This document shows, piece after piece, positions 7,536-64,000 of a DNA stretch of 64,000 nt. Location of the stretch: IMG/VR virus record IMGVR_UViG_3300048591_000147, positions 248,001-312,000 of that record. One strand, written 5' to 3'. The translations under genes were made by a program, and so were the position numbers. The notes under the pieces were generated by a model. The model saw nothing but the letters and a program-made list of their open reading frames with translations, searched no databases and was not told where the DNA came from. Within the stretch, counting starts at the first letter, position 1. Each line of letters begins with the position of its first letter.

Positions 7536-7554
7536 GAATTGATAAATATATCTT

Positions 7555-33354: not shown

Positions 33355-33454
33355 AATATTTCTCCCATACATTATTTATCATGTGGTGAAAAATATTTGA
33401 AACAGTTGATATGATGTGATATGATGTATCATCATATTTAATTAGGTTCTTATT

Positions 33455-59097: not shown

Positions 59098-60213
59098 ATG
59101 GACAGAGTTACAGAGTTAGTTGAGAAGTTAAAGCACTTTGACGAAGCGTATTTCAATGCTTCCATAACCGATGAAGTGCTTGATGACAATGAATACGATA
59201 ATCTTAGGAACAAGCTAAAACTATTGGACCCATCTAACCAGTATTTTACTGGTATTGGGTCTGATGTTCGCGGTGGTAAGGTTCCCCTACCATTCCCGAT
59301 GGGATCATTAAATCAAGTATATGATGATAATGACATCCTGAATTGGATAACGAAGTATGGCATTTCGAGTGCTGTCATATCTGATAAATTGGATGGATGT
59401 TCTTGTGAGCTAATCTATAGAGATGGCCAGTTTGCACAGGCGTTCTCTAGGGGTAATGGCGTCGAAGGCGCTGACATAACAAGAAACATTGCGCTAATCC
59501 CTAATGTGCCTAAAACTATATCTGCTGGTTATTTGTTCCCAGATGACATCGTAGTCAGAGCGGAAGTGATCATCAAGAATTTAGTATTTGATGTGAAATA
59601 TTCAAAAGAATTTAAGAATAGCCGCAATATGGTGGCTGGTATTCTTAATAGAAAACTTCCAACAGAAGACGTACTGGGTGACTTCGAAGTTATTGTTTAT
59701 GAAATAATGGACGGTGTAACCAATCTTACGAAGGCCAAAGAATTGGAGCTTCTTAAGCAATATGGTTTTACCGTTGTGGAATATCAGACTCATCCAATTG
59801 ACATTCTGAATGATAATGATCTGGGTAAAATGGTCTTTGATCGAAAGGCAAAGTCTGCATACCTGTTAGACGGGTTGGTAATAACTACAGACACGTATAA
59901 AAACATTTCTGCACAGTCTAACTCGTCATCGTTAAATCCAGAACATTCAGTAAAGTATAAGAATCTTTCTAGAGATGCATACCGTGAAGTGTCGGTAGTT
60001 GACGTCCTATGGGAATTGTCAATGAATGGACTATGGAAGCCTCGCGTACAGATTGTCCCAACGGAACTAGATGGTGTCACTATAACCTACGTCACTGGAC
60101 ATAACGGGCGTTTTATATACGATAACAAGATAATGCCGGGGACTGTAGTTAAAATCGTCAGAGCAGGATCAGTTATACCTCAAATCGTCGGGGTGATATC
60201 CGTTCCTACGTAA
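59098..60213 (+). CDS. ligA: NAD-dependent DNA ligase, N-terminal part (Ia + adenylation + OB)
   Basis: YFNA...YD, KLDG, SRGNG, DGLVI, VKYK, VRAGSVIPQIV followed by a stop. Confidence 0.93.
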   Translation: MDRVTELVEKLKHFDEAYFNASITDEVLDDNEYDNLRNKLKLLDPSNQYFTGIGSDVRGGKVPLPFPMGSLNQVYDDNDILNWITKYGISSAVISDKLDGCSCELIYRDGQFAQAFSRGNGVEGADITRNIALIPNVPKTISAGYLFPDDIVVRAEVIIKNLVFDVKYSKEFKNSRNMVAGILNRKLPTEDVLGDFEVIVYEIMDGVTNLTKAKELELLKQYGFTVVEYQTHPIDILNDNDLGKMVFDRKAKSAYLLDGLVITTDTYKNISAQSNSSSLNPEHSVKYKNLSRDAYREVSVVDVLWELSMNGLWKPRVQIVPTELDGVTITYVTGHNGRFIYDNKIMPGTVVKIVRAGSVIPQIVGVISVPT

Positions 60214-60963
60214 AAAATCATAAATTATACTTCTCAAGGAATCAAAAGAACGATGCTTGTGATTAATTCGTAATAATGGGATGTTGTTATTGTAAGCATA
60301 CATATATTTTTTGTAGTCATATTCGGCATTTTTTGTAAATTTTTCCAATGCTTCCTTGTCCGTAGTTATACCACATCTGAACATTCTCTTTGGATCAGTG
60401 TGTTGTACCCCATCATATTCTATCAATAAGTTAAAATCGTTTAGATAGAAATCGAAGCGTAGGTCACAATAATCACCAACTAAACCGTTGAATTTCTTAT
60501 CAAATGTATGTTTTATTCCATAGACATTTGTTAATATATCTGATATTTTTCTCTCAGCACTTGACATTTTTTTAGAACATAGAGGACAACCTTGACCAAA
60601 TAAATGTTTCCCCGGAGCTATCTTAAAATCAGCATGAATAGGACACATGACGATTATCTTGGTGGTGGAATTTGTATATTCTACTTTATCGTAATTATAT
60701 CTACCACCATGAATGAAATTGAATTGTGATTTCAATGTATTGATATCTTTTCTCTTTATGTTCCCTATTTTATCAGACTTACATTTAGCACAGCCGGATT
60801 TGTCTAAGTGTTGATTAGGAACTTGTTCAAAGTCTCCATGAATTGGACAAGTTATAGTAACTTTCGATTTTACTGTAGTATACGTGGTTTTATCATATGT
60901 ATATTTGTTATTATGTATCTTATTAGCTTTTTCAATAAATTGTTCTGTTGTGACTCTTTTCAT
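60169..60963 (-). mobile_element. Homing endonuclease (Vsr/EDxHD-like nuclease with Zn repeats) inserted antisense in ligA
   Basis: Two CPIH...GC..C repeats; RFDFYL...IEYDGVQH. Start at 60963 after an AGAGGT RBS; TATAAATA at 61018-61025 on the minus strand. Confidence 0.88.
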
Positions 60964-60978
60964 GTACGGAATTACCTC

Positions 60979-61006
60979 TTGATTCTTTTTGTTTCCGGTG
61001 TATAAT
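60979..61006 (+). promoter_or_regulatory. Sigma70-like promoter for the ligase C-terminal gene
   Basis: TTGATT-16-TATAAT; AAGGTG RBS at 61025-61030 before ATG 61042. Confidence 0.65.
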
Positions 61007-61041
61007 ACCATTCATTGTATTTATAAGGTGTGTAGATTTTT

Positions 61042-61854
61042 ATGGATAAATTTGAAAAATATTTTAACGATTCAATGAATAAACTAATGGGCGAGGGTAA
61101 TTGGTGTTGGAGTCCATCTGGTGTAGAAGTTATGATCCCAGATCATAATAACAATCCGAAGGTAAAATTTAAACAAGCCTTAGCGTTCTTTGATACCCTG
61201 AACGTTGATTTGTTGAAAGAGGCTTCCCTGAAGTCCGTGTTTGACAAGTACAATCTATACAATCTTTCATATGATAACATCATTGTATTCTTGGTTGAGC
61301 TTCTTGAACTGGAGTGGGTCAGGGTAATTGGTTCGAATGGTAAAAAGATTTTCAACAGCTTACATAATAAGCTACAGAAATTACCTCCTGAAGAGTTTTT
61401 AGGCGCCCTCAGATATTTTGGCGCAGGGTTCGGTGTTAGAAAATCCAAAATGCTGTTAAATCAATGTGATGGTATACATGCTGTCAAACATTTATCAGAG
61501 AACGATATTGTTAATATGGTTGGATTTGACACAACCACTGCAAAAATGATACTTTCAGGTATTGATGAAGCACTACTTTTATTAGAGCGCTTGAAGGATT
61601 ACATCACATTAGTTAAGAAGGTGGCAGTGTCCGCTGATCTTTCACACCTTAATGTGGTGCTGACGGGTTTCAGAGATTCTACATTACAGAATTTTATTGA
61701 AATGAATGGCGGTAAGGTTGGTTCGGGTGTAAGCAAAAAGACAACACACCTAATCTGCTCGTCAGTGGATTCCGGCTCTTCAAAATATAAGAAGGCACAG
61801 GAACTGGGTGTTACTGTAATAACACTTGAGGATTTTAAAAATCAATACCTATAA
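61042..61854 (+). CDS. ligA: NAD-dependent DNA ligase, C-terminal part (HhH + BRCT)
   Basis: FGAGFGVRK and VGFDTTTA HhH motifs; VVLTGFRD...GGKVGSGVSKKTTHLI...KYKKAQELGV BRCT. Confidence 0.9.
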   Translation: MDKFEKYFNDSMNKLMGEGNWCWSPSGVEVMIPDHNNNPKVKFKQALAFFDTLNVDLLKEASLKSVFDKYNLYNLSYDNIIVFLVELLELEWVRVIGSNGKKIFNSLHNKLQKLPPEEFLGALRYFGAGFGVRKSKMLLNQCDGIHAVKHLSENDIVNMVGFDTTTAKMILSGIDEALLLLERLKDYITLVKKVAVSADLSHLNVVLTGFRDSTLQNFIEMNGGKVGSGVSKKTTHLICSSVDSGSSKYKKAQELGVTVITLEDFKNQYL

Positions 61855-61875: not shown

Positions 61876-62115
61876 ATGAAAATGTTATATAGAAAAAGAG
61901 ATAATACGGGCGCATTAAATTTGTCTACAGTTACGTCTATACGGAAATTCCAATTTCCCGAGGATACTCCAGCGCGTTATGCATTAATGTTTTATACCAA
62001 TTTTAGCTCATCGACGTATGATTTTAGCTTTAATTATACTTCAGAAGCAGATCGAGATGAAGAATATGAGGCAGTTATTAAACATATAAATTCAGATTTA
62101 CCATACTCAGCATAA
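61876..62115 (+). CDS. Hypothetical protein
   Basis: 79-aa ORF with AAGGA RBS. Confidence 0.6.
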   Translation: MKMLYRKRDNTGALNLSTVTSIRKFQFPEDTPARYALMFYTNFSSSTYDFSFNYTSEADRDEEYEAVIKHINSDLPYSA

Positions 62116-62125
62116 GGACAATAAT

Positions 62126-62389
62126 ATGAATTTTTCAGAAGCATTAGTAGAAATAAAAAACGGTAAGAAGGTTTCAAGAGAAGGGTGGAATGGTAAGGGG
62201 ATGTTTGTATTCTTAGTACCGGGTTCTACCTTTAAAGTTAGTAGAGCACCATTACTTGGAATTTACCCAGAGGGTACTGAAATAAAGTATCATGCCCATG
62301 TTGATATGAAAACTGCGGACAATCAGGTAGTTCCATGGTTAGTTTCTCAGACTGATTTATTGGCTGATGATTGGGGCGTTGTTGAATGA
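62126..62389 (+). CDS. DUF2829 / Tad2-like anti-Thoeris sponge family protein
   Basis: MNFSEAL...GKKVSREGWNGKGMF...PWLVSQTDLLADDW. Confidence 0.88.
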   Translation: MNFSEALVEIKNGKKVSREGWNGKGMFVFLVPGSTFKVSRAPLLGIYPEGTEIKYHAHVDMKTADNQVVPWLVSQTDLLADDWGVVE

Positions 62390-62610
62390 AAATATCTCCA
62401 GAGATGCTCGACCAATTCAAAGATGATAAAGCGGGATTGTTAAAGTTAATTAGAGAGATGGCACCTAAGAAAATTGCAGAAGAACTTTGTAGCGTCCAAC
62501 CGATGGATGGCATCGATTTGATGACTGTAGCGGACGCTTTAGAAAATTATAAATGGGCTACACCACATTGTAGGCTGGGTGTTCCATATAATGAAGAAAA
62601 TGATAAATAA
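62386..62610 (+). CDS. Small protein with gp23-like VQPM motif
   Basis: LIREMAPKKIAEELCSVQPM. Confidence 0.55.
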   Translation: MKISPEMLDQFKDDKAGLLKLIREMAPKKIAEELCSVQPMDGIDLMTVADALENYKWATPHCRLGVPYNEENDK

Positions 62611-62616
62611 GAATAT

Positions 62617-62680
62617 GGTTGTATGATGTGACTCGAAAAGCTTTGCGGAAGCGATCTTCGACTGGTCGCCTACTCCACCA
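62617..62680 (+). ncRNA. ssrA: Two-piece tmRNA, acceptor piece (5' boundary approximate)
   Basis: T-arm GCGATC-TTCGACT-GGTCGC, then CTACTCC-A-CCA; GATAAATA late promoter at 62602-62609. Confidence 0.92.
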
Positions 62681-62822
62681 AAATTACTAGTAGCCACTAA
62701 GGTAGGAAGGGTATCGTGAACCTTTATCCTAGTGACCTTGACAAGGCCAAGGTAGGGATTAGTTGCCTAACAGCTTAGAATGTGTCGGTTTGATTTCTAG
62801 GCGTGCTAATAGTAATTTTGAT

Positions 62823-62990
62823 GGGGTAGTAAGGATTCGACGGAAAGAATAGTACAGAAGCGGACAACCGGATAGATGACTGACCTAATCAGCATAAAAA
62901 CTATAAATGCAAGCAATGACGCATTTTATGATGTCGAGTACGCGCAAGCGGCATGAACTATCACGGGGCCTAATCCGCCTTGTTACCCAA
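62823..62990 (+). ncRNA. ssrA: Two-piece tmRNA, coding piece (3' boundary approximate); tag ASNDAFYDVEYAQAA
   Basis: GGGGTAG pairs with CTACTCC including G3-U70; conserved GGATTCGAC; resume GCA at 62909, stop at 62954-62956. Confidence 0.92.
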
Positions 62991-62999
62991 TAAGATTGC

Positions 63000-63026
63000 A
63001 AAACACCAGCGAAAGCTGGTGTTTTT
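63000..63026. terminator. Bidirectional terminator after tmRNA
   Basis: AAAACACCAGC-GAAA-GCTGGTGTTTTT. Confidence 0.9.
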
Positions 63027-63028
63027 GT

Positions 63029-63271
63029 TTATATGGAAAATGCTTCTACAGAATTTCGTCTAACAGAATCAATCATTTTCTTGTTTCTAAAATAGTAATG
63101 TAAATCGTCTTCAAGAATGACTTTTCTAAATATGAGCCGACGCTCTGCCTTTACCTCTTGTTCCGCCAATACCATTGGCGGAAAAACAAATTGGGTCCGC
63201 GTCGGTTTTAGCTGATAACGAATTAATTTAATATATATGTCTTTCTTTGGTTTTCTAGGTTTATTGTTCAT
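63029..63271 (-). CDS. Hypothetical basic protein
   Basis: 80-aa ORF with AAGGA RBS. Confidence 0.55.
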   Translation of the reverse strand: MNNKPRKPKKDIYIKLIRYQLKPTRTQFVFPPMVLAEQEVKAERRLIFRKVILEDDLHYYFRNKKMIDSVRRNSVEAFSI

Positions 63272-63358: not shown

Positions 63359-64000
63359 ATGCAGCAAAATAGAAACAGAAACAACTCTGAATTACCGGGT
63401 AACGACTTTCTCGTATTACAGCCACAAGATGCAAGCGCTATTAGATGTTTCAAGCAAGTAATACCATTAACAATATACCACTATTACATTTCTGATCCTA
63501 TTGAAGATCATGCACCATTCTACGATCTATTGAATACATTGAAGACCGCAGAGGCACATGATAGAATCATCATTTACTTAAATTGTCCGGGCGGCGCATT
63601 ATACGTTGCTATCCAAATCGTTAATGCAATACAAACCTCTCAGGCTACTGTTATAACATGTTTAGATGGCCAAGTGTGTTCAGCCGCTACACTGATCTTT
63701 TTAGTGGGTCACGAATACATAGTAAATAAACATGGTAGTTTCATGATTCACAACTACTCCGAAGGTGTCGTTGGTAAGGGTAATGAAATAATTTCAAGAG
63801 TTAAACACGCGACTGACTGGTTTGAAAAATTAACTTATGACATATATGGTAATTTTTTAACTGCAAAGGAGATCGAAGATATATTACAGGGTAAGGATCT
63901 ATGGCTAGACAGTGATGCAGTTCTAGAAAGATTGCAAAAAAATGAACAGAAAGAAGATGCAGAGGAACAGGCAGAAGAGGAAGTCGAAGAAATTGTTCCA
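63359..64000 (+). CDS. clpP: ClpP-like serine protease, 3'-truncated (not in ORF track)
   Basis: IYLNCPGG, VCSAAT (Ser), FMIH (His), DLWL (Asp); GGAG RBS and CATAAATA late promoter at 63329. Confidence 0.88.
   Translation, partial: MQQNRNRNNSELPGNDFLVLQPQDASAIRCFKQVIPLTIYHYYISDPIEDHAPFYDLLNTLKTAEAHDRIIIYLNCPGGALYVAIQIVNAIQTSQATVITCLDGQVCSAATLIFLVGHEYIVNKHGSFMIHNYSEGVVGKGNEIISRVKHATDWFEKLTYDIYGNFLTAKEIEDILQGKDLWLDSDAVLERLQKNEQKEDAEEQAEEEVEEIVP

What the first reader, a model, noticed from the sequence alone, without database searches (positions are those of the whole stretch)
62602..63026. Circularly permuted (two-piece) tmRNA gene in a phage, under a late promoter
The 3' tRNA-like half (T-arm + CCA, ends 62680) precedes the 5' half (GGGGTAG at 62823). 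The acceptor stem is 7 bp with G3-U70. Inter-piece pairing is visible (GGTTGT 62617 with ACAACC 62864). The tag ASNDAFYDVEYAQAA ends in AA, typical of ClpXP degrons. Permuted ssrA is known from alphaproteobacteria and some cyanobacteria and betaproteobacteria, so it hints at host or origin. The GATAAATA promoter shows integration into the phage programme. I cannot verify how often it is reported in phages.
Basis: partly seen in the sequence, partly recalled or inferred. Interest (0 to 1): 0.85.

Follow-up and report, generated by a model that had tools for sequence, protein, structure and literature searches.

The report
Two-piece tmRNA gene in jumbo phage
A 315-kb wastewater phage carries a real, conserved gene for a split ("two-piece") ribosome-rescue RNA (tmRNA); this kind of gene is already known in phages, so it is a slightly unusual new example, not a new phenomenon.

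Summary
Rfam's permuted-tmRNA model matches window 62617-62956 (+) at 83 bits against a gathering score of 47 (E 2e-14). The 3' tRNA-like half ends in ACCA at 62680. The 5' half starts at G62823. The acceptor stem has 7 bp with G3:U70. GGTTGT pairs with ACAACC. The tag is ASNDAFYDVEYAQAA, and a terminator closes the gene. Seven relatives in phage and metagenome contigs, including Stenotrophomonas phage Marzo, show compensatory changes in these helices and synonymous changes in the tag. A strain 13% diverged in the neighbouring ORF has no change in the acceptor piece. The gene is therefore functional and under selection.

It is of the betaproteobacterial (Rhodocyclales) type, but it belongs to a phage-borne group whose 23-nt signature is absent from 185,579 bacterial species genomes. 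Two features are unusual: a 6-bp T stem and a 142-nt spacer (bacterial ones parsed here: 4-44 nt). They push it below ARAGORN's default threshold.

The ATAAATA motif upstream is a real, enriched gene-upstream motif. Its "late" timing is inferred, not shown.

Two-piece tmRNAs in phages are already published and annotated. Verdict: a new member of a known kind, of modest interest. Processing, charging and tagging remain untested.

The parts
62602..62609 (+). Promoter-like motif GATAAATA (NATAAATA class), ending 7 nt before the first base of the mature RNA
   Evidence: Sequence. ATAAATA is enriched 11-fold in the 60 nt upstream of ORFs. The same motif stands upstream of the gene in L009 (GATAAATA, 14 nt before GGTTGT) and L007 (TATAAATA, 7 nt before), but not in L004. 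Activity and timing were not tested.
62617..62680 (+). Acceptor piece (the 3' tRNA-like half): 5' strands of the inter-piece helices, T arm, acceptor 3' strand, discriminator A, encoded CCA
   Evidence: RF04321 alignment. No substitution across 62612-62692 in a strain 13% diverged in the adjacent ORF. Only 2 differences from L009.
62651..62669 (+). T arm: a 6-bp stem GCGATC/GGTCGC (including one U:G pair) and the 7-nt loop TTCGACT
   Evidence: The CM treats the extra pair as insertions. L009 is identical here. The other six relatives and all 73 bacterial beta-type genes parsed have 5 bp.
62681..62822 (+). Intervening segment (spacer) of the precursor, predicted to be removed. Its base (about 62679-62689 with 62810-62820) continues the acceptor stem as a helix
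   Evidence: Folds. L009 has a spacer of similar length (132 nt), but the aligned spacer regions share little sequence. The basal helix is kept through different sequences in all relatives with a spacer longer than 5 nt. An inner helix is not supported: changes at 62730-62732 in a strain are uncompensated.
62823..63027 (+). Coding piece: acceptor 5' strand, D-loop analogue, 3' strands of the inter-piece helices, PK1 region, tag frame, 3' hairpins
   Evidence: RF04321 alignment. Near-identity to L004 from 62864 to the terminator.
62823..62829 (+). Acceptor 5' strand GGGGTAG (G1, G2, G3:U70); predicted RNase P site 5' of G62823
   Evidence: The acceptor covaries at positions 4-7 across 8 relatives (6 stem versions), while G1, G2 and G3:U70 stay fixed.
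62864..62869 (+). ACAACC, the partner of GGTTGT 62617-62622 (outer inter-piece helix)
   Evidence: RNAalifold pairs at columns 1-6/289-294, with both-sides changes in L005 (U-A) and L012 (A-U, A-U).
62870..62892 (+). 23-nt signature of the phage-borne group (GGATAG, two variable bases, GACTGACCTAATCAG), covering most of a hairpin at 62876-62895 in the PK1 region
   Evidence: Exact matches in 5 viral contigs and 7 metagenome contigs, and in none of 185,579 bacterial and archaeal species genomes. The hairpin shows AU to GC covariation at two pairs.
62909..62956 (+). Tag reading frame: resume codon GCA, then ASNDAFYDVEYAQAA, then the stop codon TGA
   Evidence: L004 encodes ASNDEFFDVEYAQAA with three synonymous codon changes, including Ser AGC to TCT.
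63000..63025 (+). Intrinsic-terminator-like hairpin followed by a T run; predicted 3' end of the coding piece
   Evidence: 11 pairs, loop of 4, tail TGTTTATATG. Conserved in L004 and L007 with changes in the loop and stem.

Best explanation
This is a working gene for a two-piece (circularly permuted) tmRNA of the betaproteobacterial type, carried by a jumbo phage of about 315 kb.

Shown here:
- The gene has the complete anatomy of a permuted tmRNA.
- Its helices covary in relatives.
- Its tRNA-like halves and its tag frame are under purifying selection.
- It stands as its own unit between an enriched phage upstream motif and a terminator-like hairpin.

Inferred from knowledge of tmRNA, not tested here:
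- A precursor of about 410 nt is made from roughly 62615 to roughly 63030.
- The two halves pair through the acceptor stem and the helices 62617-62647 with 62841-62869.
- The 142-nt spacer hairpin is cut away by RNase P, 5' of G62823, and by 3' trimming back to the encoded CCA at 62680. This leaves a 64-nt acceptor piece and a coding piece of about 205 nt held together by base pairing.
- Host AlaRS charges the RNA with alanine through G3:U70 and the discriminator A.
- With SmpB and EF-Tu it enters ribosomes stalled on broken mRNAs. No smpB was found in the 67 kb seen, so SmpB is presumably the host's.
- Translation resumes at GCA 62909, and ASNDAFYDVEYAQAA is added, marking the product for host proteases.

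The likely benefit to the phage is to keep ribosomes free during infection, when mRNA is being degraded and non-stop complexes accumulate. It may be made under the phage's own (possibly late) transcription programme.
For: - RF04321 matches at 83 bits against a gathering score of 47, end to end. ARAGORN calls a permuted tmRNA with the same tag at 90% of its thresholds.
- RNAalifold on 8 relatives recovers the outer and inner inter-piece helices, the T stem, part of the acceptor stem, the trailer/leader helix and the PK1-region hairpin. Of 39 predicted pairs, 24 have at least one both-sides change.
- The acceptor stem has 6 different versions, with G1, G2 and G3:U70 fixed.
- In a strain from another run, 29 of 222 positions differ in the upstream ORF, mostly at third codon positions. 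It has 0 differences across 62612-62692, 1 in 62823-62911, and 5 of 142 in the spacer.
- L009 shares both tRNA-like halves almost exactly, but its spacer shows little sequence similarity.
- The tag differs from L004's by three synonymous codons and two conservative replacements.
- An identical sequence occurs in an independently sequenced wastewater run.
- The motif is enriched and conserved, and a terminator-like hairpin follows the gene.
- Bacterial beta-type genes carry a sigma-70-like promoter at the same place in the RF01850 consensus. Here a phage motif replaces it.
Against: - There is no RNA-level evidence. All four runs laid were Logan contigs. X1 and X2 were flagged probably DNA, X7 is a DNA run, and the RNA run (X18) shows only that a relative is present.
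- The 6-bp T stem would give a 13-bp acceptor/T stack, which departs from the standard tmRNA and tRNA geometry and could affect EF-Tu, SmpB or AlaRS binding.
- The gene scores below ARAGORN's default threshold and far below the gathering score of RF01850.
- A plain energy fold of the two pieces prefers a non-canonical pairing of the acceptor piece with the tag region.
- The tag ends in QAA, not the LAA preferred by E. coli ClpX (own knowledge).
- No SmpB or gp55 homologue was found in the part of the genome seen.
Confidence: 0.7

Rival explanations
1. The RNA is made and processed, but it acts against the host system; it does not supplement it. It could compete with host tmRNA for SmpB, AlaRS or stalled ribosomes. 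Rescued products would then receive a phage-specified tag with a different fate, for example slower ClpXP degradation because of QAA. Alternatively, host trans-translation would be damped.
For: The tag is longer than its relatives' tags and ends in AQAA. Tags are swapped between close strains exactly at the resume codon, with ANDSVYEIRA... in place of SNDAFY..., which suggests selection on tag identity. The T-arm geometry is unusual. A TLD-only phage tmRNA (DS6A) resembles a molecule shown to inhibit tmRNA in E. coli (PMC4131195, PMC11915505).
Against: All elements needed for full trans-translation are intact and conserved: G3:U70, ACCA, the resume codon, the in-frame stop and a C-terminal AA. 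Relatives carry ordinary ...ALAA and ...LAA tags. Nothing here distinguishes competition from supplementation.
Confidence: 0.15
2. The tmRNA and the ClpP-like protease gene that follows it (63359-64063) form a phage-encoded tag-and-degrade module.
For: The order tmRNA, ClpP-like, primase is conserved in the window, L004/L010 and L007/L008. The ClpP-like proteins are 65-74% identical.
Against: XacN1 and Xoo-sp13 have ligase, Clp protease, primase with only about 150 nt between ligase and Clp, and no tmRNA annotated there. The ClpP gene therefore predates the tmRNA at this spot, and the tmRNA sits in a variable insertion zone. In the window a reverse-strand ORF and a terminator separate the two genes. 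Other carriers (Marzo, L005, L006) have no ClpP-like gene in the DNA held. The three syntenic phages are relatives, so this is a single observation.
Confidence: 0.08
3. It is an inert relic, a captured tmRNA gene that is decaying, or only a fragment used as an integration site.
For: ARAGORN's default run misses it. The beta model gives 15.6 bits. The T stem is odd and the spacer very long.
Against: The gene is complete with both halves, and both halves are far better conserved than the flanking ORF and the spacer. The 6-bp T stem itself is conserved in L009. The tag shows synonymous substitutions. No integrase was found among the neighbours scanned.
Confidence: 0.05

Closest known systems
Betaproteobacterial two-piece tmRNA (Rfam RF01850 beta_tmRNA; Rhodocyclales such as Thauera, Azoarcus, Azonexus/Dechloromonas, Accumulibacter)
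   Same: The gene order is the same (acceptor piece, spacer, coding piece), as are the helix layout, the G3:U70 acceptor, the single PK1-region hairpin and the CCTTGTTACC-like element after the tag. The promoter abuts the GGTTGT start. Seven close relatives of the window gene pass the RF01850 gathering score.
   Different: The window gene itself scores 15.6 bits against a gathering score of 84. Its T stem is 6 bp against 5 bp in all 73 bacterial genes parsed, and its spacer is 142 nt against 4-44 nt. The full CCA is encoded, whereas most bacterial genes encode only ACC. The phage sequences fall on the other side of a well-supported branch from 68 bacterial sequences (100/97). That split is partly a result of how the two sets were collected. 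The promoter is a phage motif in place of a sigma-70-like one.
Permuted tmRNA of Stenotrophomonas phages of genus Menderavirus (Marzo, Mendera, Moby, YB07, IME-SM1, BUCT608, Ps15 and others)
   Same: It is a phage-borne, beta-type permuted tmRNA that shares the 23-nt signature and the ...NDxxY... tag style. It is already annotated as tmRNA or ssrA in several GenBank records.
   Different: Identity is about 77% over 92 nt only. Marzo has a 5-bp T stem and a 57-nt spacer, sits in a tRNA cluster, and has the tag (A)ANDDSYTVRIAA. The phage genomes are about 160 kb and are not close relatives of this one.
Two-piece tmRNA of OM43 phage Melnitz and other marine phages (Buchholz et al. 2022, PMC9004378)
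   Same: A permuted ssrA in a lytic T4-like myophage, for which a role in keeping the hijacked translation machinery running was proposed. That survey found tmRNA genes in 402 of 18,146 phage genomes, with 133 unique structures, 53 of them two-piece by ARAGORN.
   Different: The Melnitz gene is of alphaproteobacterial type, lies behind an early promoter and is associated with a glutamine riboswitch. This one is beta-type, lies behind a T4-late-like motif, and has no riboswitch hit.
Caulobacter crescentus two-piece tmRNA (Keiler, Shapiro and Williams 2000, cited in PMC9004378)
   Same: It is the experimental model for the mechanism assumed here: one precursor, an excised loop, and two base-paired pieces active in tagging.
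   Different: It belongs to the alphaproteobacterial lineage, which is an independent permutation event, and it is cellular, not viral.
One-piece phage tmRNAs (mycobacteriophage Bxz1 group, Bacillus phage G) and the TLD-only DS6A RNA (PMC4131195)
   Same: These are also phage-encoded tmRNA genes.
   Different: They have the standard gene order or lack a tag frame. They are not permuted.

Membership tests
Permuted (two-piece) tmRNA, Rfam RF04321 | Covariance-model score at or above the curated gathering score | tested here: met
   83.0 bits against 47, model positions 1-213 of 213, E 2.2e-14.
Permuted (two-piece) tmRNA, Rfam RF04321 | Permuted gene order: T arm, acceptor 3' strand and CCA lie upstream of the acceptor 5' strand and the tag frame | tested here: met
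   CCA ends at 62680, G1 is at 62823, and the tag runs 62909-62956.
Permuted (two-piece) tmRNA, Rfam RF04321 | 7-bp acceptor stem with G3:U70 (the AlaRS identity element), discriminator A, and CCA | tested here: met
   GGGGTAG pairs with CTACTCC, followed by ACCA. G1, G2 and G3:U70 are fixed while positions 4-7 covary in 8 relatives.
Permuted (two-piece) tmRNA, Rfam RF04321 | T arm with a 7-nt TTCGAnT loop on a 5-bp stem | tested here: inconclusive
   The loop TTCGACT is present. The stem is 6 bp, not 5, in the window and L009, where the CM needs two insertions. The effect on function is unknown.
Permuted (two-piece) tmRNA, Rfam RF04321 | Helices that hold the two pieces together, supported by covariation | tested here: met
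   Columns 1-6/289-294 and 26-32/264-270 have many both-sides changes. In the window itself three pairs of the model are non-standard.
Permuted (two-piece) tmRNA, Rfam RF04321 | Pseudoknot PK1 between the helices and the resume codon | tested here: inconclusive
   A hairpin at 62876-62895 is supported by covariation at two pairs. The second stem of a pseudoknot could not be tested because the region is invariant in the set.
Permuted (two-piece) tmRNA, Rfam RF04321 | Short tag frame starting at an Ala codon, ending in hydrophobic ...AA plus a stop, and constrained as a peptide | tested here: met
   GCA ... GCG GCA TGA. There are three synonymous codon differences from L004, including AGC to TCT.
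Permuted (two-piece) tmRNA, Rfam RF04321 | Processing into two pieces, alanylation, SmpB binding and tagging activity | not testable with these tools
   Only contig-level public data were available, with no read ends. No smpB was found in the 67 kb seen.
Betaproteobacterial subtype, Rfam RF01850 | Score at or above the gathering score of 84 bits | tested here: not met
   The window scores 15.6 bits. Relatives L004-L008, L010, L012-L014 and Marzo score 94-125 bits. The window is assigned to this type through those relatives and shared motifs, not through its own score.
T4-type late promoter (TATAAATA read by a gp55-type sigma factor) | 8-bp motif placed about 6 nt upstream of the transcript start | tested here: inconclusive
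   GATAAATA matches 7 of 8 bases and ends 7 nt before the mature 5' end. The first base is not conserved in this genome's copies. The transcript start was not measured.
T4-type late promoter (TATAAATA read by a gp55-type sigma factor) | The motif recurs upstream of genes more often than its composition explains | tested here: met
   16 of 101 ORFs have ATAAATA within 60 nt upstream. Only 33 copies occur on both strands of a 95%-coding window, an 11-fold enrichment. Only one other 7-mer passes the same filter, and it overlaps this one.
T4-type late promoter (TATAAATA read by a gp55-type sigma factor) | The phage encodes a gp55-like sigma factor, and the motif-bearing genes are expressed late | tested here: inconclusive
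   No T4 gp55 homologue was found among window ORFs (phmmer, E up to 10), but about 250 kb of the genome was not seen. The genes behind the motif include SSB-, NAMPT-, nudix- and HNH-type genes. No expression data are available.

The most novel reading that the evidence does not exclude
There may be a phage-adapted lineage of beta-type two-piece tmRNAs that has left the bacterial gene pool. It would move between unrelated phages (54 kb to 315 kb, low to high G+C) and exchange tag cassettes at the resume codon. In this jumbo-phage clade it would work with the adjacent phage ClpP-like protease as a virus-controlled tag-and-degrade system with altered tRNA-like geometry (a 13-bp acceptor/T stack).
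Probability: 0.1. Interest if true: 0.6.

Novelty: new member of a known kind. Interest (0 to 1): 0.3.

Why it matters
The finding adds a well-supported example to the small, functionally untested set of phage tmRNAs.

It also shows a practical blind spot. Surveys that rely on ARAGORN at default settings, such as the huge-phage survey PMC7162821 and the two-piece count in PMC9004378, would miss this gene. The newer Rfam model RF04321 finds it.

The conserved 6-bp T stem and the very long spacer are natural variants. They could be used to test how much the tRNA-like domain and the precursor loop of two-piece tmRNAs can vary.

The finding does not open a new mechanism or settle what phage tmRNAs are for.

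Tried and rejected
- ARAGORN at default settings found nothing in the window. It succeeds only at thresholds of 90% or lower.
- Megablast against 50,697 phage records found no match. Blastn found only a 92-nt match to Stenotrophomonas phages.
- The Rfam beta, alpha and cyano subtype models do not reach their thresholds on the window. The beta model gives 15.6 bits, and the standard tmRNA model gives a 19.6-bit partial hit on the 3' half.
- The exact 5'-half 21-mer found only the source contig and L003. L003 has that motif but no tmRNA by Rfam or ARAGORN. I did not pursue it.
- The minimum-energy co-fold of the two pieces recovers the acceptor and T stems. However, it pairs the acceptor piece with the tag region and not with ACAACC. 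I rejected it in favour of the CM and covariation structure.
- Structure inside the spacer has a fold z-score of only -2.4. A predicted inner helix is broken by uncompensated changes in a strain, and the L009 spacer aligns poorly. I treat the spacer as spacer, apart from its basal helix.
- Public runs gave no read ends or joints. All four were Logan contigs; X1 and X2 were flagged probably DNA, and the RNA run shows only presence. There is no evidence on processing either way.
- Searches for gp55 and SmpB in the window were negative. They are uninformative for the unseen 250 kb.
- A functional tmRNA-ClpP link is weakened by XacN1 and Xoo-sp13, which have the ligase-Clp-primase order without the tmRNA.
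- The idea that the permuted type reveals the host is rejected, because Stenotrophomonas phages carry the same type.
- I did not test which feature lowers the ARAGORN score by editing the sequence. L005, with a 104-nt spacer, is detected at default settings.

Full report
**1. The observation**

- GATAAATA at 62602-62609.
- GGTTGT at 62617-62622.
- A T arm at 62651-62669.
- The acceptor 3' strand CTACTCC at 62670-62676, then A and CCA ending at 62680.
- GGGGTAG at 62823-62829.
- ACAACC at 62864-62869.
- The resume codon GCA at 62909.
- The frame ASNDAFYDVEYAQAA, closed by TGA at 62954-62956.
- A hairpin with a T run at 63000-63025.

The two acceptor strands give seven pairs, with G:U at the third. 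Rfam's merged permuted-tmRNA model RF04321 matches 62617-62956 over its full length at 83 bits (gathering score 47, E 2e-14). It is the only family above threshold in the 64 kb.

ARAGORN at default settings finds nothing. At 90% of its thresholds it calls a permuted tmRNA with the same tag. The subtype model beta_tmRNA gives only 15.6 bits.

**2. The genome**

The window is identical to part of IMG/VR contig IMGVR_UViG_3300048591_000147, which is 314,956 bp long. It encodes a large terminase closest (43% identity) to those of the Xanthomonas jumbo phages XacN1 and Xoo-sp13. It also encodes UvsX-like and gp32-like proteins, NAMPT and an NAD-dependent ligase. G+C is about 38%. Near-identical or related DNA occurs in wastewater, activated-sludge and freshwater runs. 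The window contains no tRNA gene.

**3. Relatives and structure**

A 23-nt stretch at 62870-62892 occurs in five viral contigs and seven metagenome contigs. It also lies in the region that matches the Stenotrophomonas Menderavirus phages. It occurs in none of 185,579 bacterial and archaeal species genomes.

Together with the window these give eight distinct genes. For the seven held in full, ARAGORN or Rfam calls a permuted tmRNA, and all seven pass the beta_tmRNA gathering score. The eighth, L009, is cut off by the end of the stored DNA but still matches RF04321.

A table of their parts shows:
- six versions of the acceptor stem, with G1, G2 and G3:U70 fixed;
- a 5-bp T stem in six genes, and 6 bp in the window and L009;
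- spacers from 5 to 142 nt.

RNAalifold on the eight genes, with no structure supplied, recovers both inter-piece helices, the T stem, part of the acceptor stem, a helix between the 3' trailer and the 5' leader, and a hairpin in the PK1 region. Of 39 predicted pairs, 24 have at least one both-sides change.

In every relative with a spacer longer than 5 nt, the spacer folds into a hairpin whose base continues the acceptor stem, although the sequences are unrelated. This is the precursor form expected for excision of the loop.

**4. Selection**

A wastewater run holds a contig identical to 61900-62895. A second run holds a strain with these differences:
- 29 of 222 positions in the upstream ORF, mostly at third codon positions;
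- none across 62612-62692;
- one in 62823-62911;
- five of the 142 spacer positions.

L009, from a 173-kb contig, has both tRNA-like halves nearly unchanged (two differences each). That includes the 6-bp T stem. Its spacer is 132 nt and shows little sequence similarity to the window's.

The tag of L004 (ASNDEFFDVEYAQAA) differs by three synonymous codons, one of them AGC to TCT, and by two conservative replacements. The RNA and its tag frame are therefore under purifying selection, and the odd T stem is not an assembly error.

In the diverged strains the sequence changes abruptly right after the resume codon to a different tag (ANDSVYEIRA...). Tags thus appear to be exchanged as cassettes.

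**5. Type and origin**

A looser pattern retrieved 120 bacterial loci. Of these, 73 could be parsed as beta-type permuted genes, almost all from Rhodocyclales. All 73 have a 5-bp T stem and spacers of 4-44 nt, and most do not encode the final A of CCA.

In a tree of the tRNA-like domain plus the PK1 region, the eight phage sequences lie on one side of a branch (support 100/97) and the 68 distinct bacterial sequences on the other. The two sets were collected with different patterns, so the split is partly built in. The absence of the phage signature from bacterial genomes is the independent part of this result.

The host cannot be read from the type, because Stenotrophomonas phages carry the same type. 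That gammaproteobacteria have one-piece tmRNA is my own knowledge; I did not test it here.

**6. The promoter claim**

ATAAATA occurs 33 times on both strands of a window that is 95% coding. Sixteen of 101 ORFs have it within 60 nt upstream, an 11-fold enrichment. Only one other 7-mer passes the same filter, and it overlaps this one. The base before the motif is not conserved.

The motif ends 7 nt before GGTTGT. It recurs upstream of the gene in L009 and L007, but not in L004. In the bacterial beta consensus a sigma-70-like promoter occupies the same place.

The gene therefore looks like a stand-alone unit driven by a phage motif that resembles the T4 late promoter. The T4 consensus and its spacing are from my own knowledge. 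Late timing is not shown, for three reasons:
- No gp55 homologue was found in the window.
- The genes behind other copies of the motif are not mainly structural.
- No expression data exist.

**7. Neighbours**

The order around the gene is as follows:

| Position | Strand | Feature |
|---|---|---|
| 59098-60213 | + | NAD-ligase, N-terminal part |
| 60169-61011 | - | HNH endonuclease |
| 61042-61854 | + | NAD-ligase, C-terminal part |
| 61876-62115 | + | ORF of 79 aa |
| 62126-62389 | + | Tad2-like ORF |
| 62386-62610 | + | ORF of 74 aa |
| about 62615-63030 | + | tmRNA gene |
| 63029-63271 | - | ORF of 80 aa |
| 63359-64063 | + | ClpP-like protease |
| from about 64101 | + | DNA primase |

The order tmRNA, ClpP-like, primase recurs in L004/L010 and L007/L008. 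XacN1 and Xoo-sp13 have ligase, Clp, primase with nothing between ligase and Clp. The tmRNA therefore lies in a variable zone next to an older ClpP gene, and a functional link is possible but not supported. No smpB was found in the 67 kb seen.

**8. What is known already**

- Permuted tmRNAs in phages are published. Buchholz et al. found tmRNA genes in 402 of 18,146 phage genomes, with 133 unique structures, 53 of them two-piece, and described the two-piece gene of phage Melnitz (PMC9004378).
- The 2025 tmRNA database lists 79 unique phage sequences and introduced RF04321 (PMC11915505).
- Huge phages are reported to carry tmRNA and SmpB (PMC7162821).
- Several Menderavirus GenBank records annotate the gene.

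No function has been demonstrated for any of these in the papers I read.

**9. Verdict**

This is a genuine, selected two-piece tmRNA gene of beta type in a jumbo phage. It is a new member of a known kind with two unusual, conserved features: a 6-bp T stem, and the longest spacer in the set examined. It falls below ARAGORN's default threshold. The mechanism I propose is the standard trans-translation pathway using host factors, and it is inferred, not shown. Interest is modest.

Noticed in passing
window 59098-60213 (+), 60169-61011 (-), 61042-61854 (+): The NAD-dependent DNA ligase gene is split into an N-terminal ORF (371 aa) and a C-terminal ORF with a BRCT domain (270 aa). An HNH homing-endonuclease gene on the opposite strand lies between them. 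The ligase is a single ORF in XacN1 and Xoo-sp13, and appears uninterrupted in L009. No group I intron hit was found in the window.
   Followed up: partly
window 62126-62389 (+): This ORF of 87 aa matches the Pfam Tad2-like (Thoeris anti-defence 2) domain at E 1e-26, two genes upstream of the tmRNA. In L009 the homologue matches in two pieces about 550 nt apart, as if interrupted.
   Followed up: no
window 62386-62610 (+): This ORF of 74 aa directly upstream of the tmRNA has a weak, sub-threshold match to the N-terminal region of T4 major capsid protein gp23 (motif CSVQPM). Differences in a diverged strain fall mostly on third codon positions, so it is probably a real gene. Its stop codon overlaps the GATAAATA motif.
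   Followed up: partly
window 63359-64000, continuing to 64063 (L002:3028-3732): A ClpP-family serine protease gene (Pfam CLP_protease, E 1e-14; phrog_1827, E 1.5e-60) lies downstream of the tmRNA and is followed by a primase gene. The adjacency to the tmRNA is shared with L004 and L007 but not with XacN1 or Xoo-sp13.
   Followed up: yes
window 62909-62956, in runs X2, X18, X1 and X7: Closely related strains keep the acceptor piece, the spacer and the 5' part of the coding piece, but switch to different tags right after the resume codon (ANDSVYEIRA... or ...YGETALAA). This suggests recombination that swaps tag cassettes.
   Followed up: partly
L003:1089-1109 (-), IMGVR_UViG_3300031857_002715: This viral contig has the exact 21-nt 5' tRNA-like motif (GGGGTAGTAAGGATTCGACGG), but Rfam (gathering) and ARAGORN detect no tmRNA. 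It may be a fragment, a very divergent form, or a TLD-only element.
   Followed up: no
L012:3170-3244 and L012:6252-6562: This 43.5-kb metagenome contig carries the relative with the shortest spacer (5 nt between CCA and G1). About 3 kb upstream is a tRNA with anticodon CUA, which ARAGORN labels tRNA-Pyl and which is a possible amber suppressor.
   Followed up: no
window 1-64000: NATAAATA sites lie 0-37 nt upstream of many ORF starts, for example at 7541, 17556, 27641, 31302, 34532, 36269, 46555, 55624, and on the minus strand at 33373, 47629, 48636 and 61018. Several lie so close to the start codon (0-9 nt) that the transcripts would be nearly leaderless, or the start codons are miscalled.
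   Followed up: partly
L091, L135, L049 (genome contigs): Beta-type permuted tmRNA genes also appear in records labelled Pseudomonas indica, candidate division WWE3 and Rhodospirillales, outside Rhodocyclales. This could be transfer, a binning error or mislabelling.
   Followed up: no
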